Part shown: positions 17,047 through 52,089 of the stretch, piece after piece
How the letters are laid out: every line of letters starts with the position of its first letter
How positions within the stretch are numbered: the first letter of the stretch is position 1
From: Laetmonice hystrix
Lineage: Eukaryota
Direction of reading: 5' to 3'
DNA: 64,000 bases
NCBI GenBank assembly: GCA_965235115.1
Contig: OZ249440.1
Span: forward strand, 18,352,001-18,416,000
Position numbers and translations under genes: made by a program
The notes under the pieces: model-generated
Database searches by the model: none
What the model was told of the DNA's origin: nothing
The model's input: only the letters and a program-made list of their open reading frames with translations

Positions 17047-17201
17047 TCATGCATACGCTTACCGCGTGTAGCATGCACGCCTAGATGGCAACTTTACGTT
17101 TGCATGTTGTAATTCTACAGGCATATTTGCTACACAATTTATTTTGGTCTCTTAAATTATCATAATAGGGGCCTACTATCTTTTATATTGTCTGGTATCA
17201 C

Positions 17202-17357
17202 NNNNNNNNNNNNNNNNNNNNNNNNNNNNNNNNNNNNNNNNNNNNNNNNNNNNNNNNNNNNNNNNNNNNNNNNNNNNNNNNNNNNNNNNNNNNNNNNNNN
17301 NNNNNNNNNNNNNNNNNNNNNNNNNNNNNNNNNNNNNNNNNNNNNNNNNNNNNNNNN
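17202..17357. other. Assembly gap (156 N)
   Basis: Run of N. Confidence 1.
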
Positions 17358-17442
17358 AATGTTGTTTCCCGGCTCTCTCTCAGTGTAACCGTAATGTTTT
17401 TTCCCGGCTCTCTCTCAGTGTAACCGTAATGTTGTTTCCCGG

Positions 17443-17530
<88 letters not shown>

Positions 17531-17560
17531 GTAACCGTAATGTTGCGTCCCGGCTCTCTG

Positions 17561-17629
<69 letters not shown>

Positions 17630-17690
17630 GTAACCGTAATGTTGTTTCCCGGCTCTCTCTCTCAGTGTAACCGTCATGCTGTTTCCCGGG
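17358..17690. repeat. Minisatellite aatgttgtttcccggctctctctcagtgtaaccgt with internal (CT)n expansions
   Basis: About 5 units next to the gap; the CT tract varies from ~4 to >35 dinucleotides between units. Confidence 0.9.
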
Positions 17691-18520
17691 TTGGCCTTCA
17701 ACAAAGTACGAAGGTTGGGGGGGGGGGGGGGGCGTAGAATTCCCAAATCACCGTGTAATATATACGTCCTAATGCCCTTTTTATGTGGTTCTTCTGTAGT
17801 CCTCACGCTCCTTTTTAACGAGAACATTCCTTCAGGTGGACGCAATTGGTAAACGCAAGCCTGAGCTTTTCCCTTTTGTGAATGTTCTAAAATTGCTAAA
17901 GTATGCATCAACATTCAGAATTACCCCTCGGGAGGATGTGGGAATAAATATGAGATCCACCAACCAGAGCTGTGGATCAAATCACTGCCGTATAATTATG
18001 AGCGCTTAGGAGCCTGTAGTATGGACATTTATAATATAGCCTTAAGTCGACATAAATAATTCAAAACAGTGTGATACTCTGCCCCAAGATTGACTTGAAG
18101 CTATAATCACATTGTGCCTTTCTTCAATATGATTGTATTACATGTGCTGTATGTTTTTTACTTCTTCAGGCATAGGCCTACAGTAGGCTATAGTTTGTAT
18201 TACAAGTGGGCCTAATTATACGGTAGATTACGGTGTGAAATATAACATGGAACCTACTAAGTCCTGATGTTTAGATTTGTTCCTTTATTGAATTACGGAA
18301 GACTGGTTTACAAATCTCCTCTCCCAAAAATGGCTGTCACATCATTATGGCAGATATGAAAGACTTTTACATTGATAAAGTTCCTCGACTCTAACATTAT
18401 GGCAGATATGAAAAACTTTTATATTGATAAAATTCCTCAACTCTAAAAAGTTCTATGCGCCGATCTGTGCATGCGCTGCACTGAAGCCGACGTTACTGGC
18501 AACTTCCGGTGGGAAAGTTC

Positions 18521-25017: not shown

Positions 25018-28000
25018 CTATGGCACAAAGCGAGGTTTATTTTTAAGAAATGTGTAGTTAGGATTATGGGAAAGTTTGTGGTATGGAGCGTACGGATCGT
25101 CAGTGTAGAATTTTCTTTCCTTCCAGTAGCGGTTCACCATACGGTCTAGCAGCCGGCATTGGGTCTTATTACAGAAAACGTGTTGATCCAAACGATTTAA
25201 CCGAGCACCAGCTTTAATCCAACGCTTCTTGCCCCGTCCGGCACGGGGCCGAATCCATAATCCGTTGTGGAGGCGGAAAAATCTCTCGACGACCGCTTTC
25301 ACTGTTCGCGGCCCCTTGTTGGTCCGACTGAAGTAAATTTTACTTCTCGACTGTTGCTGGAGCACTGGGTTGTAGACATTTTGAAGGACACACCTGTCAA
25401 GACATCATGTTTACTTTTATTAATACCATAATTGTGTCTGCATGTCACACAATCCAATATAAATGCACTCACTTTGTCTTAAATGCCGACTTCTTAATTT
25501 CGGTGGGTATAAAATTACAACTGGTCAGTAACAAATTCATTCAGCTTGTGATAATGAACAGGGGAATCTAGTTAAGAGCTTATTGACCCATGGATAAATA
25601 AAACATTTATTTCAAAGATGGTTTAATGACCACTAGACTCTAACCGTCTGTCAATGTTACAAAGTGTACACAGGTCCACAAAAACATTTTACGATGGCAC
25701 ATAATACCTGTAACCCTGTTTCTGAGCATGACAGGGCAGAAATTATGATTGTTTTTATTATGAAGTTTTATATTCTTAAAAGAAAGTTAGAACACATTGA
25801 GACCCTAGTGAAAACAAAAGTCTCTGAATTAGATCTCAGGCTTGGCCGAACCTTACAGATCACAGTAGAAGCAAAACATGTTTTTCAAAATATTTGTTCT
25901 TATACAGAAAGTGAAAGAATTATGATTACCCTTTCTTTGACAGTAGTGATGAGACAGGTGCCACCTGGTGCGGTTGTTTCCAGAATGTGGCGAGAGAGCG
26001 CAGTGAGAGAGATGGTCCAAGTTTCAGTGCACCAGTTGAGAGAGGCCCACAAGTCGGTAGGCTAGACGTGGGTTGACCCCATGGTAACGCTGCATTCTTA
26101 AACAGTCTGCTTGACACGTCAAATGCTCCTGTAAACGAATGAAAAAACGAGAACCAAGCTACATTGCAGTAAAGTAAAACAGACTTCTATGGACAATGTA
26201 ATCAAGGGACACTATCAATAGTCCAGTACCCCCGGTACATGTACAAGGTGACTTTGCATACACTGGATACATTATTTTCATTCCCGATTCACCGTCATAG
26301 TATAGATTACTTGTCTTCTACACATTCTTTTTCTAAGAAAGTTACGGTAAGAGAGAACATAGACAAACTCATAATTCTGTTGACAAAACATTCTGGAAAT
26401 GGGCTTCTGGTTTGTAATTTAAAATATCTTTAGTACATGTGGCTGGTAGAATTTAGAAACAATTATTTGAGTAGAGGAAAGTCTGACCCCACAGACGTGC
26501 CTAACAACATACTGACTGATCTTTATGAAAGCTCCTCTGTGGGAATATCTCACTTCCTTATTATGTTACCGAATTTTAAAACACTGAACTTGTCTTGACC
26601 ATGTCCTTACAAACATGTTCGAAGTGGAATACAGAAATCACGTGTCCAACCTGCCCCCACCTGACTACTTTAGTTTGTGTCACCTAAAGTTAACACAGCT
26701 CTAGCCAGGTGTGCTGCTACTGGCGCTGTGCTACTCTGAGATTTCCTCCTATTATAATTCGGCTTTCGCACTATGCCTTATCTGTTCTTCATAATTTGTA
26801 AAGTCGGCTATGTGGTATACCAAGGTTCTGCAAGGTACCTGTTAGACTGAATAATTCAAAGGGGCAACTTCTTGTTGAAAAAAGGCAATTTTTCCAAAAT
26901 TATCAAGGTGAAAGCTACCCCGCCCCATGCTAATTGCAGTTTTGACGCCACTCTGAGAGAAAATCCTGGCTAGAACACCAATAACGATACCAGTACACAG
27001 TGAATTAAAATGGCATTCCGTCCAAATCTTGTTCTAGTCCATGTACATGTGAATTTGTAGGGATTGATTTGAGATGGTAGGATCTGCATTACTAGATCAA
27101 TGCTCCTACTGGGATAAGGATCAAGATCACCGAGCGCTGTGCCTGAGGATAAGAGCAAACAAGATAGAAAAGTCAGGATCCACGAGATGTTTCAAATAAG
27201 TCACATCAATCAACTTGACAAGACTTAGCTATCACTACGTAATACTAGTAGGAGCTACTGCTCCATATAGATAAGTAATTATGAAGTCTCTCTGGGATAT
27301 TTAAAGATATGAATAACATACACCACAACAGGGCACCAAGGCTCTTCTAGCTAAGACAAAGAAAGAAAATCATTAAAAGAGAGCAGAATTTTTTTTACCC
27401 AATTCAGGTCATGCGACTCTGTGCCTACAGGCATACTCATGTAACATGAATAATACAGAGATCCTAATTCCTTCATTCATATTGATATTGCAAATGTTCT
27501 AGTCCAGTCATTAATGCTACCGCTGTGACCTAACAGTACATCTAAACAGAGTTAGCCTCTCTTAGCCTTATTTTACAATATCATCAATTTGGACAGTCTC
27601 AACTTGAGTGCCTACAAAAACATCTTGAAGCTGCGAAGATGTCAAAAAGCCAGGACTGAAAAAGTTAATGCCTGTTCAGTGATAGTCCGTACTATAAGCG
27701 AACACTTTGTTGTGCCATATGTCACATCCAAATAATATGCTTCAAGTTCACTGGAGTTTCAGTGTCTCTTTAGAGCATAAGTGATTTCGTTTTAATTTAC
27801 AAGAAATTCTTTGTCAGAGCAATAATTAACACGATGGTCTAGGCATGAGACTTTTAGTAATCTGACAATCTCCCAGTGGAATGTAAAAGTAAGTGTGCAC
27901 TCGATATTTTTATACACATGGTAAAATGAATCATTGTGCAGCTGACACCACAGCACAAGTAGCGAGATTTATGGTTAGGGTTAGCGTTTTATTGCTCATT

Positions 28001-33400: not shown

Positions 33401-36351
33401 GAATACCAAAAACTTTACACGACACAGAAATGTATTATTCCAGAGAAATCAATTTAACACTTGCTTTGTCACTGGATTTGGTGGTTTTGTGACATAGTTA
33501 ATATTGCTATATAGGGAAAACCTGGAGAAGCTACGAGCAGCAATTAAGGAAGGGAAATCCAACAAAGTGACAAGAAAGAATGATGCATTACTCAGTGCTG
33601 AGGAGAGGCTGCTCACGCTGAACTATGACCTCAAACGAGCAGAAGCAGAGGTAATCCTTGTATATATATTACTTAGTACTGACTCTCATTACTATCAACT
33701 AATCAAGTAATCATGATCATAATGATTATGTTTTGATCTAGTTGTTTCAATAATTGTATTTTCGTGACTGTATGGGCCCATGCACTGTATCTCTGAAGCT
33801 ATGACACTATTCTAAATTAGGCAGGCAGCTGGCCTGGGGTAAGTAAAGCTGGCCAGGTTGATTAAATAGTTTATTTTTACTGTTTTAGTTATTTTGTAAG
33901 ATTCAGCTATTCTTTGTGTTGATGAATGAGTGAATTTTCAGTGGGACAATATCATCTAGTTGTCTTCTCACTAATCTCAACAGTCAAGTGTTGACCAGGC
34001 CTTGGACTTAAATGCAGAGAACTATTGTTAGAATTTGATATTGTATTCAACTGAATATTTATTCTACAGAATGACAGAGCAAATTCTGAGAGTCGACTAA
34101 TGGAGGACTACAGGGACCTCGTAAAGAAAGGACGTGAACAATTCCGGAAAGAGTTGGAAAGCATCAAACCCGATGTACGGATTGGACGCAGAGTGGGTGA
34201 GTGGAAGTCATACAGCTCACCAGCCACAGTGTGTTTTATTGGATGACCACAAAACGTTATCCGGATATCGTCTGTAAGTCTATAACATAGAAACCAAAGA
34301 AACAATGTCAGAAATGGATTTTTGCAGTGACAGCTTGGCTTGCAAAGCCACATTACAGTACCCATAGGATCAGCATAACTTTTGGTGTGTTGATGCACAT
34401 CAAAGTTGAATGCTTACCTTTTTCTACAAAAGACCTGTTCAGTTTTTGACTAAAAAGATGCTTTGTACCGTAGGTAGGGCCTCAACCAAAATGTACAGGC
34501 CTTTCCCTAGATTTCATGCACCTTATTTTCACCTTATTACAGCTGCCACAGTGCTGAATGAGTTGGTAAATGTATTACAGGTGGTCGTATGACTGAGGAA
34601 GAACTGAACTCGCTGATCGCTCATGCCCACCGACGTATTGAACAACTCCAGTGCCAGGTTGCTGAGCAACAAGCTTTGGAAGGTGAGAGAACAATGGCTG
34701 CTCTGGAACGTCAGAAAGATGCTGACCAGGCCGAGGCATGCAAACGTGTCGCACGGGAAGTGGAGAGACTCCGAGGAGAGTTTGAACTGGAGAAAAGAAG
34801 AATGGTGAGTTGTGAAGAACTAAATGTTGTCCAGAGGATGTGTTTTTAGAGGTTTTATTGGTACTAATTCAATACTTAAATTAAAATCCAACTTTTTATG
34901 TTTTCTTCTTTAAGCTGTGGATTACATGTGTATTGCCCTAGTAATAGAGAATATTTCAAGAAGAGTCCATTTTGTTGAGGCAGTCTGAATGTAAAAACCA
35001 AAGCCATTGTTCCTGTTTGTACTTGACAGGAAAATGCTGCCAGTGTGACGTGTGAGAAGGAGATCCGTACCCAGCTGACACGTCAAGCCGGCGCCCACTC
35101 CGACCATCTCACACAGGTCCTTGAGGTGCAGAAAGACACACTCCACCGGAAATACGAACAGCTCATCCATGACCGTGTGATCAGTGAGCGTGATGGCATG
35201 AGGCAGGAGATTGCTGGCTGGGTGACACGACTTAAGGGTATAGAGGCAGCTATTGAAGGTCTGTTGATGTTGGTTTGATAAACACTAGGTTTAGGTCAGG
35301 GCCCGGTTTCTCGAAAATACATAAGTCTGAGTTTCACTCAAATTTACTCAACTCAGGAATGGTGCCAAAATGGAATGAAATGGACGATTCACATTGGCTA
35401 AAAACGTTCTTTGGAACATCTCACTCTGAGACAAGTAGATTTGAGTGAAACTCGGGCTTATAAAGTTAAGTATTTTCGAGAAACCGGGCCTAGGTTTGCT
35501 GATAGTAGGCTCATGACAATATTTGGTACTCTTCAGTTGTGCTAGAAATTTGAGAAATATGTACGTAATGCAATCGCATTCCTGGGCGACCTGAAAAACT
35601 AGAACTAGGATTTTGTTTTTCCAAAAAAAATGTGAAAGTTTACTCGGGATATACCTTTCAAAGATTAAGTGCTCCTAGTAAGGAGCTATGATGGTGTGAG
35701 AAAGTCTAACGTTGGTAACTGTTAAATGTTTCAGGTCGTGCTGAGATGGAGAAGTTAGGTAGGAAGGCCCAGGAGTTGTGGCTGGCATGTCAGACTCTGG
35801 CCAATGTCATTGAGAATGGAAAGGAAGGGGCAGTGACCTGGGACGAAGCGTTGAAACCACTCGCCAGTGAACTTGATGCTGTTCGGGAAGCTGGTAATGA
35901 ACATCCGTTCGTCAGTGCTGTCCTCAAGGCTGTCCCTGACGAGGCCCTCACCCGTGGGGTGTGGACGCAAGACTCACTAATCCAACGTTTCGACAAAGTT
36001 CGGCGGATGTGTCGCCGAGTGGCCATGATTGATGAAACAAACACTTCGTTGTTCCGATACTTCCTGTCGTCAGTACAATCTTTCCTGATTGTCAAACACA
36101 GAGCGCTTGCAGACAGTGAGGATGTTGACTCAAGTCAGCTGACCACGTTTATGTTGGTGGATAACGCGGCTCATTGCTTGGAGCGGGGAGACCTCGAGCA
36201 AGCAGTGCGGTACATGAATCAGTTAACTGGCGAAGCACGCCGCATTGCCTCTGATTGGCTGACTGAGGCACGTCTGTTACTTGAAACAAAGCAAGCTGCA
36301 ACTGCTCTGTTAGCACATGCCTCGGCATCAGGACTCGGCTCTCTCTTCTAG
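30414..36351 (+). CDS. IMMT: MICOS complex subunit MIC60 (mitofilin), 12 exons, 754 aa
   Basis: Exons 30414-30440, 30802-30965, 31764-31976, 32268-32376, 32580-32772, 32881-33008, 33199-33296, 33515-33650, 34070-34196, 34581-34804, 35030-35258, 35735-36351; all phases join (2,265 nt). TM segment GVIGAGGVVGYAWYDPSFR, ELNSLIAHAHRRIEQL, coiled coils and mitofilin domain ERGDLEQAVRYMNQLTGEARRIASDWLTEARLLLETKQA. Confidence 0.97.
35300..35490. mobile_element. 191-bp MITE (PIF/Harbinger-like) in IMMT intron 11
   Basis: Perfect 21-bp TIR GGCCCGGTTTCTCGAAAATAC / GTATTTTCGAGAAACCGGGCC plus internal inverted gagtttcactcaaat; flanks CAG / TAG (3 bp, one mismatch). Confidence 0.8.
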
Positions 36352-36964: not shown

Positions 36965-38214
36965 ATCATGTCAAAAAAGTTCTTAAATGCCTTAAACAAG
37001 TCCATCGAACGGAAGTAACTATAAATGATAAAAGCAGTTTGCGCAGTAAGTTTATTCGATAGTGACAATACAAGTTTTCATTTTCATGAAAAATTAATGT
37101 AGGTAATGAAGTGGTACTAAACCGTTTTGACATAGTGAGAGCTATGGTAGAAAGGCGACACGTTACGTTAGGTGATAAGGCCAGCAGTGCAGTGACCGTG
37201 TAGGAGGGCCCGATTATTTCTCTTTTTGCACTTCAATTTCTTTGAAACGGTCATTCTCTGTGCAGTACAAATTGAAGCACAGTTTTTATCATAACGATCA
37301 AACATGCTAGATCATCCTATTGTATACAGGCCTTGTCCTTTGAAAAGTCCAGGCGAGCAAGTACATATATACTCGGCTAAACATCAATTAGAACCTCTAG
37401 GCGAGCAGTTTTAATACTTGCCGATAAGTCCATCAATAAGGTTCATTGTAAGCTTATTGACTCTGACCTACCTCCGTACGCGGTACGAATGAGTTCCCGA
37501 TTATACCCAGTCTCGGTAACGCCAGACTCCCGGAGAGAGGGTCTGGATTATACCACGAGGCGCACAAGGCAAGAACCAGCCGGTAGGGGGACCTAGCACG
37601 GGCCTCGAGAGAAGGGGATCGCTCCGGAGACCGAGGATGTTGGCCTCGGCAGTTTTTTTGCGCGCCTCAAAAGCAAGCCCTGTGTATAAAATGCGCCCTT
37701 TGTTCCCCATGTTTAAGTGCATACATTTAGTTCCATAGAAAGCAACGAAATGAGGCCTGTAATGGCAGGCGGGTGAAAACCTGGGACCTCTCACTGGCCA
37801 AATCCTCCCTCATTATAATATACTATTATTAATGTATTAATAACAGTCCACTTTCCCCCCAAATAAAACCCCTTTCTTGGGCACATGCCTGAGTTATTAA
37901 TATTAATTGTGCTATTAAAGTACAGGTAAGGTGCCACTTGAACAACATCAATTAAAAGTTGGAAGTGTTAATTCATACAGAAGCGTTCAATCCCATGGTC
38001 GACGGCGATCTTGTGTCATCTGAAATGAAGCAGGATATAGAGTGTATTAACAACGTCAACGTGTAGGTATCTGTGGCTCTGTTTTCTTCAATGTAATCTT
38101 GATATATATAGAGCTTCTGAGTCTATGTTTACCTTCGTAATGTTTTACCCACCTGATATCATTTCTTCTAAAATAGGTGCCTTCCATTAAAATATTTGAC
38201 ATTTTGATCTGATC

Positions 38215-39186
38215 CTATTCTGCGAGGTCACGATCCCCATGGAGATCACGGAATTTATGAGCTTCGCGTTTTTCTTCCAGGTCACGATCCCCATGGAGAT
38301 CACGGAATTTATGAGCTTCGCGTTTTTCTTCCAGGTCACGATCCCCATGGAGATCACGGAATTTGTGAGCTTCACGTTTTTCTTGCAAGTCACGGTCACC
38401 ATGGAGATCACGGAACCTGTGCGCTTCACGTTTTTCTTGCAGGTCACTGTCACCATGGAGATCACGGAATTGATTAGCTTCACGCTTTTCTCCCGCATCG
38501 CGGTCACCATGGAGGTCAAGAAGCCCGTGTGCTTCACGTTTTTCTTCCAGGTCATGGTCACCATGGAGATCACGGAACCTGTGCGCTTCACGTTTTTCTT
38601 CCAGGTCACGGTCACCGTGGAGATCACGGAACCTGTGCGCTTCACGTTTTTCTTCCAGGTCACGGTCACCATGGAGATCACGGAACCTGTGCGCTTCACG
38701 TTTTTCTTCCAGGTCACGGTCACCATGGAGATCACGGAACCTGTGCGCTTCACGTTTTTCTTCCAGGTCACGGTCACCATGGAGATCACGGAACCTGTGC
38801 GCTTCACGTTTTTCTTCCAGGTCACGGTCACCATGGGGATGGAGGAGCATGTGGGCTTCACGTTTTTCCTTCAAGTCACGGTCTCCATGGGGATGAAGGA
38901 GCCTATGCGCATCCCGTTTTTCTTCCAAGTCACGGCTTCCATGAAGGCCACCTACCCTAGGGTCTTCACGTTTTCCTTCAAGGTGATGACTGCCATGCTG
39001 TTCCCGGACTTTAATATGAACCCCACGTTTCCCCTCTCGTACCTCTCCCCGTGATTGTGGGTCTTCCAGCAGAGCCCTCAACTCGCCACGAGACTCATCA
39101 AATGCCTTTGCCTCGGCCTTCTTTGGATTCACAACCAATAGACCTACCAAGACCAAAATAGTCAGGTAGGGAGTTTTCGTCAACAT
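38215..39186 (-). CDS. Secreted multi-copy peptide precursor (323 aa): signal peptide + pro-region + 15 KR-flanked His-containing peptides
   Basis: From Met15 of ORF 38215-39228: MLTKTPYLTILVLVGLLVVNPKKAEA (hydrophobic core, A-x-A cleavage), then 54-nt coding repeats giving KR|EAHRFRDLHGDRDLEE-type units. The last unit ends with TAG exactly where KR would be. Acceptors (tgcctacag|, tgttgcag|) lie just upstream of the ATG. Confidence 0.85.
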   Translation of the reverse strand: MLTKTPYLTILVLVGLLVVNPKKAEAKAFDESRGELRALLEDPQSRGEVREGKRGVHIKVREQHGSHHLEGKREDPRVGGLHGSRDLEEKRDAHRLLHPHGDRDLKEKREAHMLLHPHGDRDLEEKREAHRFRDLHGDRDLEEKREAHRFRDLHGDRDLEEKREAHRFRDLHGDRDLEEKREAHRFRDLHGDRDLEEKREAHRFRDLHGDHDLEEKREAHGLLDLHGDRDAGEKREANQFRDLHGDSDLQEKREAHRFRDLHGDRDLQEKREAHKFRDLHGDRDLEEKREAHKFRDLHGDRDLEEKREAHKFRDLHGDRDLAE

Positions 39187-39508
39187 ATTGTGAACCTGTA
39201 GGCACCTTTTCAACCTGCAACATGACACACCTAGTTGTGAGTATTCAATGTATATAATATATTTCTCCTGCTTATATTATAAAGACAACTTTTCAATTTT
39301 TTCTACAATACACTTTCCGGGGCTTTACCCCCCCCCCCCCCCCACGGATCCGCCACTGCATTCTCTAGATCTACTTTATAGCTGTTGGGCAGTGCAGTTT
39401 ACTTTAATGATTATTATAATGAATGAGTAGAGAGGCCAGCCGGGTCCCCAGCTCTGTTAAATCGCCTACAGTTAATGCCAGAATTCAAGCTCGAACCGAG
39501 GGCCTTAC

Positions 39509-39609
39509 CTTACGTTTTTCGTAGAGATATCAGTGCCAGTCGGTCTGTGTTTGGAATGATGCAGCTATCTTCTGATTGCTGTTTCCAACTGAATCAGTCC
39601 TCTTATATA
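39509..39609 (-). promoter_or_regulatory. TATA box and probable non-coding first exon of the peptide-precursor gene
   Basis: TATATAA at 39609-39603 on the minus strand, followed ~95 nt later by donor CGTAAG|gtaagg at 39509. Confidence 0.6.
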
Positions 39610-40583
39610 AACCAACATACCATAATCAGAACCCGCAGCCTATTAGAGGTCTAGTCTAGTCGTGTTGGAGCTCACTTTGGCCGGGGCAGGTGCTTGTTTG
39701 CCTCGCCCATATTCTATATAGCAGGTATTCCACCTGCCCTGACCATGCAGGCCCACATGAAGGTTTATCGGAATTCCAAACATGTACAAATTAGATTTTG
39801 AAAAAAAAATTAATGACCACTTGAATCAGAATGTACTTATACCTTTACTTGGCTCAAAAATTTGATTGCGAGTTTTATACTTTGCCCCCCCCCCCCCCCC
39901 CCCAGCTCAAAGGCAGTAGAAGAGTGTTTTAATGAACACTTGTGAGTACCTACAGGCCCGTGGCTATAGCTTGTAACGCCCCAGAAACTTGTATTATAGG
40001 CCCTATAGGCCTAATATAGGCCCCCTAGGCCTAAGGACTGGGACAAAACCTGGGGTTTTGTTCCCAGATGCCAGGAAAACGCGTATTTGGCACGGTAATT
40101 TCCCTTTTTTTCTGCCCAATTAAGGCTTCGCGCCTTCGGTGGAGGTGGGTGCCCCATTCCCATTAAGAAATGTCTAGCTACAGGAACACACTTGAAATTT
40201 ACGACTTACTGTATTTCACACTTTAGGAGTAGAAAAAGAGTTATTTGAACCCTTATCAGTTTGATTGATCACGTGTTGACTCTAAGCTATACCTGCCCCT
40301 TTCTTTGACTACCCCGCGAGTCATATGCCTACCTGTGACAGCCGGTTAACTAATGCAACCGTTTATCTTTTTTTGGGAGGGGGTTTCCAAGCAACCCGGA
40401 ACCGCCCCCCCCCTGGCTACACCCTTGCCCCCTCTCCTACCCGCCACTGCGTTGAGATTCAGGAATCTTTGAAGACAGCGTAACCAGCCATGGATAGTAA
40501 AATCTGTCGAGGCCTCCAGCGGATAACGGCCTAGACACTGGTGCTTCCACCTGTCGATAACCGAACGTATTAACATAATAAAC

Positions 40584-43500
40584 ATGGCGGTCTCCAGATG
40601 GGCAGGCGAAACTGGCTTTGCCGAAGTAGCGGCATCTCGGAGAAACATGACACAATATTTGAGCAAAAACGGAACAGATGAAGAGACTTTTGCATTAGAC
40701 ATTCAACAGGTCTATAGTCTAAGATTTTATATGAAAGATATAAACACGTTGTCGAGATGAAGCTATCTTTCTTACATTATCGCTCAGCCAAGTGAAGTGG
40801 GCGTTTCCTACCTTTGACTTTGTTAATAAGTTTCCCACCAAGCCGAGGTCTGCCCATAGACGTAGACCTGACGAAACTGAGATATCTTTATATTCCTAGT
40901 TACTACATAAAACCACCGAATATGAGTGGCTAATGGTAATGGTCCTTGTGTAGGAGATTGACAAAACGGATTGCTCTTGGGTCAAAGTAAAGTTTGCTTG
41001 TGCCATCAACGTTCTGTAATTTTCTTTCAGGCATTGTGCTTGGAAACTGTTCAAGAAGGAATAAAGATTCACCTGGTGACACTCCTGCAAGAGTATGCTT
41101 CAGTGCTTCTACCAACAGGCTCAAGGTAAACATTAAGAGTCACGTGTTTGCGGGATACCGTATCCCCGTCTCAGAAGAAATTTACATTTACATTTTTAAG
41201 AGCTGGTTCACCTAGGTGTGCATGTTTGGTAAGACTGTGATACTGACATGATGTGAAACTACTGGCTAGCTGTATGTTGATGGAATGTTAAACCAAGTGA
41301 CAAATTGCTGCCTGGTTATTGTAGTGCTGAGCAAGCGGTGGGATCATTACTGGGTATCTTCCATCAGCCGGCCATCTCAGAGAGAGCATACATACTGAGG
41401 GGACAGATCCTAGTGGCCACAACCAGTATTGCTGTCCAATATGATTTCCAGGTGAGGGACTAGCAGGCCTACCTCTTATTATAAAATTTGAGCACTAAGT
41501 CACTGAGAAGGAATCGCATTTAAGCATTAGGAGCCTACTTTGTTATGTGTGTTTTTTTTTAATTCTTCACACACTTGTGATTTGTGATTTGAGTATACAT
41601 TTGACTTATCTTCTCAATTAGAAATTCTGGAAATCTGAAATTGTTTTCATGTCTGATTACAGAGGGATCATGCAAGTTTATTTGCCCAGTTGGTTGAGAC
41701 CCTACTGGAGGTTATCTGCCATACAGGAAAGGCTTCAAGCTCCCACCTCCGAAAGACTGCTTGCTGCTGCCTTCAGGAGCTGGAAATAAATTTACCAGTA
41801 TGTGGACCCTGTGGCCAGAAGAACATGATGAAATTGGAAGATCACTACTTCTTTTCAGTAGATGGCTTGGCAGTGAATGCCTTCAAAAAATTTAAAAAGT
41901 GCTGCATCTATTCATAATATTGTTGAAGAAATGCATGTAAAAATCTTTTTTTCGACCTCTTTTTTCTATTGTATTATTTTGGGTTATAAAACAGGGACTT
42001 GATTTTTTGGTCTAATTAACCTGATGATACTTTGTTTGCAGTGTATGTTGCGTTACAAGATGGAGTACATTTACCAGTTGGCTCAGATGGAGACAGGGAC
42101 TTGTGGTCAGGGTTACCTGCTTCTCTTGGTCACAACACTACGTCACACACTCCAGCACCTCCAGCTTCAACACAGGTAGAGACAGCAATCCTAGATACTA
42201 CATCATGTAACTGTGCCATATCTTAGCCATTCAAAAATAATCTTTAAATAACATTTTCAATGCAGATTTAATAATTATTTTATTTTCAGTCAATCACCTG
42301 GCTGCCTAACTGATCTACTGTCTAATAGAACCGAACCACTGAAGCCTTACCTGATTCCCACAGACATCTATGACTGCACCTTGATGAACATGGTAACAAT
42401 ATAACATTTTACTTGGTACCCAAAACAACACCCACATAGCAAGAGATTTTTCACCACCACTAAAGTTAATCATAGAGGTACCTGGTAATAACACTTCTAT
42501 AAAGTGAAAATAAAGTGTTGAGAAAATGTGTCATATAGATAGTACCTTTTAATGATACATAGGCATAGCTAATATACGATGAGAAAATATTGTCTTTGAA
42601 AGGAAGGTGGACAATATAGTGGTACTTTAATCACTGTAATATTATAAATATGGTATTGTCAGATTCAGGATGGAAGTAAGCTGGGGGTGGTAGATGTTCG
42701 TGAGTTACGTCGTCTGGTGGCGTACGTGATGGACCATATTCACCTACTGACGACACCAGCACAGGCTCACCTCCTGGCCATGCTCGCACATGTCATTGAT
42801 GCTGTCCCTGATATTTCACCATCTGTATGTTAAATCTGTATTTTTTCTCTGTTTAAATATTAATAGAACTTTATTTGCCATGGTGCATTGTTACATGTCA
42901 CGATGTGCATTCCCTTTAACAGGGACTGCGGAACAGTTTGAACAGTGGGGGGGGGGGGGGGGGGGCTGCAGTTTGGGATGGCCCGCAAATACAATTGGAG
43001 ATTTAAAAAAAAGGGCTTTCAGAAAAAAGTGGGAGCATGAAGCCCCTCCAGCCCCCCCCCCCCCACACTTCTGCGGTCCCTCCCTGTTTAATAGTTTAAT
43101 ACAAGTTTTCCATATTTTCTTTGTGTCAGGTTAAGGGAATTTAAGAAGTCGTTCATACTAAGGTGACCTTGAAAATTTTATTCTAGCAATTGGGATGATG
43201 AACACAGGTTTAGTGAATGCATATGTCACGGTAATATATTTTTGCAGATTTTTAAATGGGCCATAATGAGAAACACCCGTTCATACAACGTCCAGATGCT
43301 GAGTCTTATGTTTGTGTTGAAGGTCAGTGAAAACATATTTCATGTTAAAGATTTAAGGCACCACTGGGCTTTATTTCCAGAGAATAATGTTCAGAAAGTG
43401 TAGTATCCATATCAATATACATGTATGTTTGTTTTAAATGAAAACTCCAAGGTGACTGCATTTGTATTGAAGTGTTTCACGTTTCTCCTGTTCAGGACTT

Positions 43501-49500: not shown

Positions 49501-52089
49501 TCGCCGTACCTGTGCAAGATTTCAGTTTTGGTTGTGCTGTGCCATGTCCTGTTCATGCTCGGCCCTGTGTGCTTTGTTCTAAGTTTCACCCGTTTTTTTT
49601 TATTTTCACAGATATCAACGTGCCTTACCTGGATAGGTCAGAGGACGCCGGCCAGGACTGTTACCCCGTTAATGTCGTTCTGCAACCAAGGCAACCAGTG
49701 CCGACACAATTTAACGTCGAGTTAGTGTTGTATTTGTAGTAGCCTTGATAAATTTCAACAACAAATTCAAGGATCTCATTGGTCTAATTCAACAACTTGG
49801 TTTATGTTAGGATAAGATCCGAACGGCAATACTTGCGTGTCAGATGCTGTTCAGATACTCTTGATCAGATGCTCCGTCAAACTACCTCATTAATTTTTAA
49901 AACGAAAGTGTGATTAAATACGATTATAGTAGAGAATATATCTGACCCGTTTTCAGAGCCGTTTTCACAGGAAAGGAGAGTTTAACCTGGTCGACGGATG
50001 TGAAAGGTGTGAGCGTGGGTCTAGAGGACCTGTGGCGACCTCTACCGTTACCTGACACGTTACAGAGACACGATGAGAGTGAACTGTTTGATCAACTGTG
50101 GCAGTCACTAACCGACCCGAAACCTGACTCACGGTAAGTGAAACAGTACAGCGGACGTTCAATAGACCGTTTTGCGTTGCCGGTTGCTATGCTGCCTCGT
50201 TTTGAAACTCGGTGCAAGCGCCTAGTTGACGACCGATGTCCGCCATAGTTAACCTATGGACAATCACTCGAGAGAGCTAATTTTGAACTGCTCATAAAAC
50301 CTTGCAAAATGGAATATTTCGAAACTTGGACCGACCCCCGACTACGATCATCCCTCCAAGAACGCGGTGTGACTATTTCTGGGTATAATAAAGCGTCACT
50401 GGTAGAGTTATCAAGTTGTGTTTGGGACCTCGAACTGCCGATCGACAGCAGCCTGGCTGACATACACGGTCCGGCTGACTGGTCTGCCGGGGGTCAAGCG
50501 CCGCGGGTGGCCGGGGCGCTTGTTTAGGTGCAAGGCCAAGGGGTAGCCGTTCACCAGGAGCTTTTCGTTTGCGGCATGCCATCATGACCAAAACAAATTA
50601 TTAGTTTATTAATTTAAAATGTATTTTTATTGAGGCAGGAACCAGCTGTTTAAGGGGAGATATTTTACATAGGCCCCTACATATATTAGCCTATATACGG
50701 GTAAAAATCAATTTTACATAGCATACATTATAGGCAGAATGTTACATACTGGGAGAACGAAGATTTTTTACATACGGGCAGAATTTTTACACATTGCGGG
50801 AGATTTAGACGGGCAAATATTTTTAGGGCCTATTACGATAGTTTTACACATGTAGGCCTATAGGCTACATGAGGGGAATTTTAAATAGGGTAGAGATCTA
50901 CGGGTTGTATAGCCTAGCCCTCCTCTCTGTCGCACGGGTCCGGGGAAGGTAAAAAAAGTGACATCATCCATGGATGGCCTTGATTTACTGTTTCCTGCCC
51001 CATATTTACTGTGACTTGCACATGTTCCATACCAACAGTGCTTGTTACCTGGCATTAATGGTCAATATCGAAATGTTTTCGACTGTCAGGTGTCTCGATG
51101 TTGCTAATATCGCTCAAGTCAAAGTTCCGACCGTTCAACTTCACACCACGATTAAAACTTATTTCTGTCTGTTACCGAGATTCCAACTGACTGTATCGTA
51201 TCACCCCCATTGTTTTATTAATCTGGCCACCCCGAACTGCTCATATTGACACGGAAAAACTCAAAATCCCAGATTTGCTCAACACCCCTTTCTTCGTTGT
51301 TCGCTATTGCCCCAGCGCTAGCAACGCGGTGCGCTTGCACCGAGTTTGGCGTCGCTAGGGAGCTTGTAGGTGGCGCTAGTAGTAGTTCGGAAAATGGTCT
51401 ATTGTTAACATACCCTAGCCTATCCTAGCCGCTCAATGGTGATGCTACAGTATTTCGCTCTTTCTTTGGCGGCAAGTCTCTGGGCTTTTGAAAACGAAGG
51501 AATCTGTTAAGAATTTACGGAGCTTTAGGTACGCATGTCAAGGAGATATAGATAGCAGTAAGAGATATTAGTTTGAAGGGGCACGTGTTTCCTTTGTTAA
51601 TTAAGTAAAAATCATACTTGCCTTTTACTTTTTACATTGTGGGTGTCCATTTTTACGCCTTCCTACATGCGGCCGTAAACCCTGATATGTATGAAGTTTA
51701 CTTTGAACCATTATGTACCGCGTCGAGTGATGTTTACATGTGTATATCTGTATACTTTCAGTGGTGACGAGTCTCTCGAGAGTGTTTTCTGTCTCAATAT
51801 GACACCTTCCTACGTTAATGATCTTCTAAACACTCGCTGGAAGTGTTTGAAAGTCAGAAGAAAATCTACAAACGTCGAATCAGGTGACACGGAGAAGAAC
51901 ATTACGTCCATTGAGGAACGTGAAGTGGAACAGCTGGGCATCTTTCTCTCCCCGGACTGTCATTTGTTGATGAGGTTAAAAATGGAAGAAAAACGTGTTG
52001 TGGTTACTATGGTAACTGATCACTCCATGGTATTGCCACTCGTCTGTGACTATCTTCGAAAACTAGAAGACATTGCACGGACACAGTAA
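40584..52089 (+). CDS. AP5B1: AP-5 complex subunit beta-1, 22 exons, 948 aa
   Basis: Exons 40584-40709, 41031-41125, 41325-41451, 41663-41797, 42042-42175, 42290-42392, 42663-42824, 43248-43322, 43496-43633, 43786-43927, 44190-44343, 44646-44735, 44954-45092, 45664-45799, 48120-48226, 48461-48597, 48713-48780, 48992-49074, 49350-49431, 49612-49720, 49957-50133, 51762-52089; phases join (2,847 nt). Recognised motifs: TACCCLQELE, FGEALVGADDE, VLAVCRALIQ, DIDIRDRAAFYY, LQPRQPVP, GIFLSPDCHLL, TDHSMVLPLVCDYL. Confidence 0.93.
42920..43086. mobile_element. 167-bp MITE with CAG...CTG termini and 5-bp TSD (TTTAA), AP5B1 intron 7
   Basis: cagggactgcggaa ... ttctgcggtccctccctg; TTTAA at 42915-42919 and 43087-43091; poly-G left, poly-C right. 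Confidence 0.8.
45347..45441. promoter_or_regulatory. Cluster of CTCF-like motifs in AP5B1 intron 13
   Basis: CCGCCAGATGGCGT (45347+), GCCACTAGGTGGCGC (minus, 45391-45377), CCGCAGATGGCGC (45419+), ACAGCAGGTGGCGC (minus, 45441-45428); motif match only. Confidence 0.45.
46101..48083. repeat. Highly homogeneous 50-bp satellite, ~40 copies, AP5B1 intron 14
   Basis: Unit aatggaagcacgtataacctgagcattgataaggctgagtatgttaggtt with few variant copies; ends ~36 nt before the exon-15 acceptor. Confidence 0.98.
50164..51400. mobile_element. Internally deleted two-ORF DNA transposon (ISL2EU-like), AP5B1 intron 21
   Basis: AT|AGACCGTTTT ... AAAATGGTCT|AT; perfect subterminal inverted 17-mer aaactcggtgcaagcgc (50205-50221 / 51331-51347). 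Two convergent ORF stubs: plus MEYFETWTDPRLRSSLQERGVTISGYNKASLVEL (SAP-like start) and minus MPGNKHCWYGTCASHS...VTFFTFP (THAP-like start). Family assignment from remembered ISL2EU traits (AT TSD, THAP transposase plus YqaJ ORF). Confidence 0.7.

What the first reader, a model, noticed from the sequence alone, without database searches (positions are those of the whole stretch)
38215..39186. Secreted polyprotein releasing 13 latent ATCUN (Cu/Ni-binding) peptides
Seen: after a signal peptide and 28-aa pro-region there are 15 peptides, each preceded by KR: GVHIKVREQHGSHHLEG, EDPRVGGLHGSRDLEE, DAHRLLHPHGDRDLKE, EAHMLLHPHGDRDLEE, 4x EAHRFRDLHGDRDLEE, EAHRFRDLHGDHDLEE, EAHGLLDLHGDRDAGE, EANQFRDLHGDSDLQE, EAHRFRDLHGDRDLQE, 2x EAHKFRDLHGDRDLEE, EAHKFRDLHGDRDLAE-stop. 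Thirteen have His at position 3 and all have a second His in an HG motif. Known: free NH2-Xaa-Xaa-His is the ATCUN site (serum albumin DAHK, histatin DSH) that binds Cu(II)/Ni(II) tightly and needs the free N-terminus; KR is the prohormone-convertase site. The main peptide has 6 acidic versus 3 Arg residues, so it is not a classical cationic antimicrobial peptide, and it matches no neuropeptide family I recognise. Inference: a cleavage-activated metal-chelator cassette (copper detoxification, nutritional immunity, redox defence or biomineral/adhesive chemistry), with ~13 sites unmasked per precursor.
Basis: partly seen in the sequence, partly recalled or inferred. Interest (0 to 1): 0.9.

Follow-up and report, generated by a model that had tools for sequence, protein, structure and literature searches.

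The report
Orphan worm multi-copy His-peptide precursor
An annelid worm genome carries a probably real, single-copy gene with no known relatives. It should make a secreted protein cut at 15 Lys-Arg sites into small acidic peptides, most starting Glu-Ala-His, a start that would chemically bind copper or nickel, though no data yet show the gene is expressed or that metal binding is its job.

Summary
On the minus strand, 38215-39186 encodes 323 aa: a signal peptide, a 28-aa pro-region, and 15 peptides each preceded by KR. Thirteen have His at position 3 and all 15 have an HG pair.

The array has 13.3 copies of a 54-bp unit. Differences between units give pN/pS 0.24 in this frame and about 1 in four of the other five. 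The fifth, an antisense frame full of stops, gives 0.34. The gene is therefore probably real.

It is a single-copy orphan:
- Three word-indexed protein searches, one exhaustive HMMER search, a metagenome scan, the genome itself and two literature motif searches found no relative.
- It is not FVamide. That orthologue lies on another contig, and BLASTP against it gives E = 3.7.
- It does not fit the LXRX motif.

No RNA run exists for this species, so expression and cleavage are untested.

The ATCUN reading is chemically sound only if cleavage leaves a free Glu-Ala-His end. Several points weaken it:
- The 13 sites are recent duplicates, not independent evidence.
- The oldest conserved part is the C-terminal HG..DLEE-KR, not the N-terminus.
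- Glu1 could cyclise.
- KR-Glu-Ala is the classic junction for X-Ala dipeptide trimming.
- True neuropeptides also carry ATCUN ends.

Best reading: a lineage-restricted, neuropeptide-like multi-copy peptide precursor. A metal-chelator function remains a minority hypothesis. Earlier notes of this scan on other DNA of this genome gave the annelid identity.

The parts
38215..39186 (-). Complete coding sequence, 323 codons plus a TAG stop, apparently one coding exon
   Evidence: The ATG has A at -3 (CACAATATG).
39109..39186 (-). Predicted signal peptide, aa 1-26 (MLTKTPYLTILVLVGLLVVNPKKAEA), with predicted cleavage after A-E-A
   Evidence: Inspection of the translation. AlphaFold puts a helix at residues 6-19. 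No SignalP run was possible.
39025..39108 (-). Pro-region, aa 27-54 (KAFDES...VREGKR), ending in the first KR
38914..39024 (-). Two old, diverged units (GVHIKVREQHGSHHLEG-KR and EDPRVGGLHGSRDLEE-KR). Both keep HG and L-E-(E/G)-KR; only the first keeps His3.
38218..38913 (-). Thirteen 18-aa units with consensus EAHRFRDLHGDRDLEE-KR. The last ends ...DLAE-stop.
   Evidence: Invariant in the 14 aligned 18-aa units (units 2-15): H9, G10, D13, E16, plus K17 and R18 wherever present (13 of 13; the last unit ends at the stop). Variable: positions 4-7, 12 and 15.
38215..38217 (-). TAG stop codon
39246..39283 (-). Two TATA-like boxes (TATAATATAA and TATATTATATA) 60-95 bp upstream of the ATG. Possible splice acceptors (ttgcag, cctacag) lie between them and the ATG.
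   Evidence: Sequence inspection only. Neither a promoter nor a splice site was tested.

Best explanation
This is a lineage-restricted, single-copy annelid gene for a secreted multi-copy peptide precursor of the proneuropeptide/prohormone type. After the signal peptide is removed, subtilisin-like prohormone convertases would cut after each of the 15 Lys-Arg pairs, and a carboxypeptidase would trim the Lys-Arg. That would release a pro-peptide, two divergent peptides and 13 closely related anionic 16-mers. The main forms are EAHRFRDLHGDRDLEE x4 and EAHKFRDLHGDRDLEE x2. I judge the peptides most likely to be bioactive secreted signals or effectors (neuropeptide, hormone or pheromone-like). Their conserved core is L-H-G-D-R-D-L-E-E plus the Glu-Ala-His start. 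If the N-terminus stays free, the peptides will also bind Cu(II)/Ni(II) as a matter of chemistry. Whether selection acts on that property is open. Shown: the ORF, the repeats, coding constraint and the lack of relatives. Inferred: secretion, KR cleavage, peptide release and any biological activity.
For: The ORF and peptides are exactly as described, in a 54-bp array of 13.3 copies. Purifying selection is specific to this frame: pN/pS is 0.24, against about 1 in four other frames and 0.34 in a stop-filled antisense frame. Ala2 uses 4 codons, Gly10 uses 3, Leu14 uses 3, and His3, His9, Lys17 and Arg18 use 2 each within the 13 related units. The ORF runs beyond the array into a unique N-terminus with a canonical signal-peptide layout and an ATG with A at -3. 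KR is kept at all 15 junctions, including the old diverged units. The nearest ESM-Atlas clusters by features are all multi-copy peptide precursors: prothoracicostatic/MIP, tachykinin and apidaecin, at scores of 0.77-0.78, which makes them weak leads only. The genome is lophotrochozoan/annelid and carries typical multi-copy precursors such as an FVamide gene. Non-amidated acidic peptides that start with Glu or with X-Ala were detected intact by mass spectrometry in Platynereis: EDSFSDWLQRGHVA and AAEQVIFGNHQNNARV (PMC3890597 supplement).
Against: There is no transcript evidence. No RNA run exists for this species, and the three runs that hold the locus are whole-genome DNA. No orthologue or paralogue was found anywhere, and the exact protein is not in the 15-billion-protein collection. 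The third-codon-position excess is only marginally significant when counted as minimum mutations (p = 0.06). No canonical AATAAA lies close behind the stop. The peptides have no C-terminal Gly for amidation and no Cys, so they lack the commonest neuropeptide hallmarks. AlphaFold2 in single-sequence mode draws the repeats as one long helix (pLDDT 70-80, pTM 0.25).
Confidence: 0.5

Rival explanations
1. The precursor is a latent metal-chelator cassette. KR cleavage unmasks about 13 free NH2-Xaa-Ala-His (ATCUN) sites per molecule, and high-affinity Cu(II)/Ni(II) capture is the selected function, serving detoxification, nutritional immunity, redox defence or material chemistry. His9 and the six carboxylates would help.
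For: His3 is present in 13 of 15 peptides with non-Pro residue 2. The His3 codon varies synonymously (CAC/CAT) and is kept in units that diverged at positions 4-7. DAHR and EAHK resemble albumin's DAHK, and X-X-His ends bind Cu(II) with log K of about 12-15 (PMC7701195). From general knowledge, dibasic cleavage also unmasks the ATCUN sites of proalbumin and prohepcidin. The peptides have net charge about -3 with a second invariant His, which is atypical for cationic antimicrobial peptides. Unchecked earlier notes say this genome has several secreted His-rich protein families.
Against: The copies are recent duplicates, so effective independent support is about three units. Old unit 2 (EDP) and young unit 11 (EAN) lack the site, while HG..DLEE-KR is kept in all units. 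ATCUN does not explain the conservation of Ala2. N-terminal Glu can cyclise, and an X-Ala start can be trimmed; either would abolish the site. Two His in 16 residues is not His-rich. True neuropeptides carry ATCUN too. His occurs at any given position in roughly 2% of peptides, so among about 100 precursors in an annelid (PMC3890597) one or two would show His3 by chance. There are no expression, induction or orthologue data.
Confidence: 0.17
2. The protein is secreted but not cut. It would be an intact acidic, charged repeat protein, helical or disordered, with a matrix, mucus, tube or mineral-associated role. The KR pairs would simply be part of the charge pattern.
For: AlphaFold2 predicts near-continuous helices over residues 119-221 and 236-322 at pLDDT 70-80. 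The 18-residue period equals five helical turns. 61% of residues are charged.
Against: The model is single-sequence with pTM 0.25, and such helices are a common artefact for charged repeats. Opposite-charge i/i+4 pairs are 0.11 per residue against 0.95 in an ideal ER/K single helix. Each unit also contains Gly and three Asp. The strict invariance of K-R, never RK, KK or RR, at all 15 junctions and through synonymous changes (AAA/AAG; CGT/CGC/CGG) fits a cleavage site better.
Confidence: 0.12
3. This is not a gene. A 54-bp minisatellite happens to be open in this frame and to abut an ATG followed by a hydrophobic stretch.
For: Three other frames of the same array are open for 143-271 aa. The genome is full of open satellite frames that match the query by period alone. 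There is no RNA, no homologue and no nearby polyadenylation signal. The codon-position test is only p = 0.06.
Against: pN/pS is 0.24 in this frame, about 1 in four others, and 0.34 only in a stop-filled antisense frame. Synonymous diversity is concentrated at Ala2, Gly10, Leu14 and Arg18. There are no indels in 13 copies. The diverged units 1-4 still keep the frame, KR and HG. A full signal peptide sits at the first ATG.
Confidence: 0.13
4. The gene is a strongly derived offshoot of a known lophotrochozoan precursor family. One route is from FVamide/fulicin-type units (KR-AHRFVG-KR-acidic spacer-KR) by loss of the internal Gly-Lys-Arg. The other is from LXRX (…EELHRF-KR, DRDLEEPELSRT).
For: Platynereis FVamide peptides AHRFVamide and AHMFVamide follow KR and precede acidic spacers, and ours read KR-E-AHRF… and KR-E-AHML…. 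The genome's own FVamide unit PHMFVGKRSDEEDDEKR lines up 18-for-18 with AHMLLHPHGDRDLEEKR. Platynereis LXRX contains DRDLEE and ELHRF.
Against: BLASTP against the genome's own FVamide precursor gives E = 3.7 at best, and E = 16 for the unit alignment. A genuine FVamide orthologue sits on contig C13. The Platynereis LXRX repeat block finds nothing in this genome, this locus included. The defining C-terminal motifs (F-V/I-Gly-KR; L-x-R-x-KR) are absent. The shared strings are short and rich in D/E/K/R.
Confidence: 0.05

Closest known systems
Multi-copy proneuropeptides of annelids (Platynereis catalogue, PMC3890597), e.g. FVamide, LXRX, PY
   Same: Signal peptide, pro-region and tandem short peptides delimited by Lys-Arg. 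Several of these families are also non-amidated and acidic. The repeat arrays evolve by local duplication.
   Different: No sequence relation to any catalogued family. No amidation Gly. The peptides are longer (16 aa), with no separate acidic spacer. No expression or mass-spectrometry evidence.
Proalbumin / serum albumin N-terminus (RGVFRR|DAHK) and prohepcidin / hepcidin-25 (|DTHF)
   Same: A basic convertase site lies directly before Xaa-Xaa-His, so cleavage creates the ATCUN Cu/Ni site. Unit 3 (DAHR) nearly copies DAHK. The albumin and hepcidin ATCUN sites are in PMC7701195; their precursor cleavage is from general knowledge.
   Different: Those proteins have one site each. Here there are up to 13 per precursor, on small free peptides. 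There is no homology.
Neuromedin C (GNH…) and neuromedin K / neurokinin B (DMH…)
   Same: Convertase-released peptides with a free X-X-His end that binds Cu(II)/Ni(II) (PMC7701195).
   Different: Those are amidated GPCR ligands of known families, with one copy per precursor. They show that an ATCUN end does not imply a chelator function.
Yeast alpha-factor and honeybee apidaecin precursors (general knowledge; apidaecin cluster also returned)
   Same: Tandem peptide copies with a dibasic site followed by Glu-Ala or Glu-Pro. The KR|Glu-Ala junction is the classic substrate for a convertase followed by an X-Ala/X-Pro dipeptidyl aminopeptidase.
   Different: In those precursors the Glu-Ala dipeptides are spacers that are removed. 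Here removal would leave His1 and abolish ATCUN. Whether annelids trim this way is unknown. Platynereis AAEQVIF… was detected untrimmed.
Histatin 5 (DSHAKRHHGY…)
   Same: A secreted small peptide with an ATCUN start and further His residues.
   Different: Histatin is strongly cationic and His-rich and is not made from a tandem polyprotein. The peptides here are anionic with two His.

Membership tests
ATCUN (amino-terminal Cu/Ni) site | His at position 3 of the mature chain | tested here: met
   13 of 15 KR-delimited peptides, assuming cleavage directly after KR.
ATCUN (amino-terminal Cu/Ni) site | Residue 2 is not Pro, so both intervening amide nitrogens are available | tested here: met
   Ala in 12 peptides and Val in 1.
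ATCUN (amino-terminal Cu/Ni) site | Free, unmodified alpha-amino group (real cleavage, no pyroglutamate, no dipeptide trimming) | not testable with these tools
   Needs peptidomics. Glu1 and an X-Ala start are both risk factors.
ATCUN (amino-terminal Cu/Ni) site | Measured high-affinity square-planar Cu(II)/Ni(II) binding | not testable with these tools
   Needs a synthetic peptide and spectroscopy or ITC.
Proneuropeptide / prohormone-type multi-copy precursor | N-terminal signal peptide | tested here: met
   An n/h/c layout with A-E-A, by inspection of the translation. No dedicated predictor was available.
Proneuropeptide / prohormone-type multi-copy precursor | Repeated peptides flanked by dibasic cleavage sites | tested here: met
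   15 KR sites in strict register. K and R are kept through synonymous changes.
Proneuropeptide / prohormone-type multi-copy precursor | Expression in neurons or endocrine cells, and detection of the processed peptides | not testable with these tools
   No RNA run for the species. The runs laid on the locus are DNA.
FVamide / fulicin family | Peptides ending F-V/I-Gly before KR (amidated FV/FI) | tested here: not met
   No such motif. BLASTP against the genome's own FVamide precursor gives E = 3.7. The orthologue lies at G000:C13, about 19.076 Mb.
LXRX family | Peptides ending L-x-R-x directly before KR | tested here: not met
   The peptides end D-L-E-E. The Platynereis LXRX repeat block finds no match in this genome.
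ER/K single alpha-helix repeat protein | Dense i/i+4 Glu-Lys/Arg pairing with very few helix breakers | tested here: not met
   0.11 pairs per residue against 0.95 in the ideal case, with Gly and three Asp per unit, despite the helical AlphaFold model.
Multi-copy antimicrobial polyprotein (apidaecin / baramicin type) | Released peptides are cationic host-defence peptides induced by infection | tested here: not met
   The main peptides have net charge -2 to -4 at pH 7.4. Induction is not testable.

The most novel reading that the evidence does not exclude
The gene is a purpose-built pro-chelator. One secreted precursor is cut at KR into about 13 free Glu-Ala-His peptides, and their ATCUN ends, helped by His9 and the carboxylates, capture Cu(II)/Ni(II) for detoxification, nutritional immunity or delivery of metal to a hardened tissue. 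I know of no natural multi-copy ATCUN polyprotein.
Probability: 0.15. Interest if true: 0.75.

Novelty: new variant of a known kind. Interest (0 to 1): 0.45.

Why it matters
If expressed, this is a new orphan peptide family in annelids, found in none of the protein collections, the metagenome scan or the open-access papers searched. It adds to the lineage-specific secreted-peptide genes this genome seems to hold. Its peptides also combine two properties rarely seen together: they are acidic, and nearly every copy has a convertase-unmasked X-Ala-His end. This gives a cheap and decisive test of whether animals use tandem polyproteins to deliver copper- or nickel-binding peptides, since a synthetic 16-mer, an H3A control and one peptidomics run would suffice. 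If the peptides turn out to be ordinary signals, the case still warns against reading function from an ATCUN motif multiplied by recent duplication.

Tried and rejected
- **Pfam:** only sub-threshold noise. RVT_thumb scored 24.7 bits against a cut-off of 27.6, with no stretch passing on its own. Plasmodium_HRP gave E = 0.38.
- **Word-indexed protein searches:** the whole protein, residues 1-112 and a five-unit piece all found nothing.
- **Exhaustive HMMER search of 1.84 billion representatives:** 35 hits. All seven top hits I inspected were unrelated proteins that merely share an 18-residue repeat period.
- **Own genome:** 84 matches. Apart from the self-match, both loci inspected (C4:38.016 Mb and C3:38.013 Mb) are simple satellites such as (GEMWRD)n, and the rest score low with many containing stops. 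No paralogue was found.
- **Exact-sequence look-up:** not in the collection.
- **Metagenome scan:** 258 pattern matches, none a relative.
- **Literature:** motif strings were found in no paper and not in the Platynereis proneuropeptide list.
- **Sequencing runs:** only three runs of one sample hold the locus. Laid on 37400-43300 they show even depth across intergenic DNA, so they are genomic and say nothing about expression. The repeat core at 38385-38581 is not assembled in them.
- **FVamide and LXRX kinship:** considered and rejected as membership.
- **ER/K single-helix reading:** considered after the AlphaFold model and rejected on charge-pair counts.
- **ESM-Atlas hits:** scores are below 0.8 and serve as leads only.
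- **ATCUN plus annelid/mollusc paper search:** none of the 12 papers listed (of 8,621 matching any two terms) contained the term ATCUN.

Full report
**What is there**

The minus strand of 38215-39186 is an uninterrupted 323-codon ORF ending in TAG. It reads as follows:
- MLTKTPYLTILVLVGLLVVNPKKAEA: a basic n-region, a 15-residue hydrophobic core and an A-E-A cleavage motif.
- A 28-residue pro-region ending in the first Lys-Arg.

Thirteen peptides have His at position 3 and all fifteen contain His-Gly. Tandem Repeats Finder reports one array at 38218-38935: period 54 bp, 13.3 copies, 89% matches, no indels.

**Is it a gene or an open satellite?**

Openness proves nothing here. Three other frames of the array are open for 143-271 aa, and the genome is full of open satellite frames. 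The frame-specific evidence is the pattern of differences between units.
- Pairwise pN/pS is 0.24 in the ORF frame. It is 0.97-1.20 in four other frames. It is 0.34 in the one antisense frame whose third positions coincide with the ORF's, and that frame is full of stops.
- Minimum mutations per codon position are 10/8/19, with 17 synonymous against 17 amino-acid variants.
- Within the 13 related units, Ala2 is written with all four codons and Gly10 and Leu14 with three each. His3, His9, Asp11, Asp13, Lys17 and Arg18 each use two.
- The frame also continues out of the array into unique sequence with a textbook signal peptide. The ATG has A at -3.
- Two TATA-like boxes lie 60-95 bp upstream.

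Points against a real gene:
- The codon-position test is only p = 0.06 when counted as minimum events.
- No AATAAA follows the stop closely.
- There is no RNA evidence at all. The only three public runs holding the locus come from one sample and cover intergenic DNA evenly, so they are genomic.

I put the probability of a real protein-coding gene at about 0.8-0.85.

**What organism, and are there relatives?**

Earlier notes of this scan on other parts of the genome call it an annelid. I partly checked this. The genome holds an FVamide precursor whose peptide block is 82% identical to the Platynereis one, and that family is restricted to lophotrochozoans (PMC3890597).

For the gene itself I found no relative:
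- Three word-indexed searches found nothing.
- An exhaustive HMMER scan of 1.84 billion representatives returned 35 hits, and the seven I inspected were unrelated proteins with an 18-residue repeat period.
- The genome itself yielded only the self-match and hits that, where inspected, were simple satellites.
- A metagenome scan found nothing.
- The exact sequence is not in the 15-billion-protein collection.
- Neither the motif strings nor the whole peptide occur in any searchable paper or in the Platynereis precursor list.

The gene is a single-copy orphan as far as these collections reach. Annelid genome assemblies could not be searched directly.

**Two leads from the Platynereis catalogue**

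Two resemblances came up and both fail as membership.
- FVamide peptides AHRFVamide and AHMFVamide follow KR and precede acidic spacers. The genome's own unit PHMFVGKRSDEEDDEKR can be laid 18-for-18 on AHMLLHPHGDRDLEEKR. However, BLASTP gives E = 3.7 at best, the defining F-V-Gly-KR is absent, and the true orthologue is on another contig.
- LXRX contains DRDLEE and ELHRF. However, our peptides end D-L-E-E rather than L-x-R-x, and the LXRX block finds nothing in this genome.

Descent from an FVamide-type unit by loss of the internal Gly-Lys-Arg remains a curiosity, at about 5%.

**How it most likely works**

The architecture is that of a multi-copy prohormone: signal peptide, pro-region and tandem peptides in strict register between invariant KR pairs. 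KR is never RK, KK or RR, and it is preserved through synonymous change. Weak feature-based neighbours in the ESM Atlas are all of this class: prothoracicostatic/MIP, tachykinin and apidaecin precursors, at scores of 0.77-0.78.

The inferred steps are convertase cleavage after KR followed by carboxypeptidase trimming. That would release 16-mers of about 1.7-2.0 kDa with net charge about -2 to -4.

Conservation within the array is highest at L8-H9-G10-D11-x-D13-L14-x-E16-K-R-E1-A2-H3 and lowest at positions 4-7, 12 and 15. The two oldest units keep H-G…L-E-(E/G)-KR, but only one keeps X-X-His. The C-terminal half is therefore the most anciently conserved part.

AlphaFold2 in single-sequence mode draws the repeats as long helices (pLDDT 70-80, pTM 0.25). 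The charge pattern is far from an ER/K single helix, at 0.11 against 0.95 i/i+4 pairs, with Gly and three Asp per unit. I treat the helix as a probable artefact and give an uncut structural protein about 12%.

**The ATCUN idea**

At the sequence level the rule is met: His3, a non-Pro residue 2, and a cleavage site directly before residue 1. Free X-X-His ends bind Cu(II) with log K of about 12-15 whatever the rest of the peptide is (PMC7701195). If the free Glu-Ala-His peptide exists, it will bind copper in a test tube. That does not make chelation the function.
- The 13 sites descend from a few recent duplications. Units 5-8 are nucleotide-identical apart from one synonymous change at His9 in unit 8, and units 13-15 are a second young group.
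- With roughly 100 peptide precursors per annelid (PMC3890597) and His at about 2% of positions, one or two precursors with His3 are expected by chance.
- ATCUN does not need Ala2, yet Ala2 is the most clearly constrained residue. Convertase P1'/P2' preference explains Glu1-Ala2 better. So does X-Ala dipeptidyl-peptidase trimming, since the KR|Glu-Ala junction is that of yeast alpha-factor and bee apidaecin (general knowledge). Trimming would leave His1 and destroy the site.
- N-terminal Glu can cyclise to pyroglutamate.
- Neuromedin C and K are ordinary receptor ligands with ATCUN ends.

In mitigation, Platynereis peptides that start with Glu or Ala-Ala were detected untrimmed and uncyclised. 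I give the chelator-as-function reading about 0.15-0.17.

**Novelty and verdict**

The kind of system, a KR-delimited multi-copy secreted-peptide precursor, is well known. The peptide family is new, and I know of no natural precedent for a convertase-unmasked X-Ala-His end on almost every copy. I therefore class it as a new variant of a known kind.

Interest is moderate at 0.45. The gene is probably real and the hypothesis is cheap to test. Everything beyond the DNA sequence is inference, and the striking count of 13 sites is inflated by duplication.

Noticed in passing
window 35746-36351 (+): A large terminal exon encodes the C-terminal domain of Mic60/mitofilin (Pfam PF09731, E = 3.5e-57, profile positions 437-614 of 614). 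It ends about 1.9 kb from the stop codon of the peptide gene, and the two genes converge.
   Followed up: partly
window 25018-25365 (-) and 51691-52089 (+): The first exon-sized ORF matches ribosomal protein L35 (PF01632, E = 7.6e-11), probably mitochondrial MRPL35. The second matches the AP-5 beta subunit C-terminal domain (PF21590, E = 8.1e-11).
   Followed up: partly
window 39173-39369, 39764-40354, 42916-43112: In the genomic runs these stretches reach contig depths of 250 to about 29,000, against about 15-60 elsewhere, and many contigs join them to each other. They are high-copy interspersed repeats, including the homopolymer tracts near 39326-39345 and 39884-39903, just upstream of the gene.
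   Followed up: no
L011:856-2379 (G000:C13:19075441-19076964, +): This is the genome's FVamide precursor: a 507-aa open frame with about 25 copies of x-x-(M/F)-F-V-Gly-K/R-R (ARMFVG, PHMFVG, SRMFVG, AHFFVG) separated by acidic spacers. The open frame has no ATG and no signal peptide at its start, so the first exon must lie upstream.
   Followed up: partly
window 17198-17914: A (GA)n/(GAGA) microsatellite reads as RERERE… in one frame and abuts a run of N, which is an assembly gap or masked stretch.
   Followed up: no
L003 (G000:C4:38015442-38018990) and L005 (G000:C3:38012027-38015638): Kilobase-long satellites with 18- to 24-bp periods are open in several frames at once, for example (GEMWRD)n and (HLSIPP)n. 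They match any 18-residue-period query at E down to 1e-27, a trap for repeat-protein searches in this genome.
   Followed up: yes
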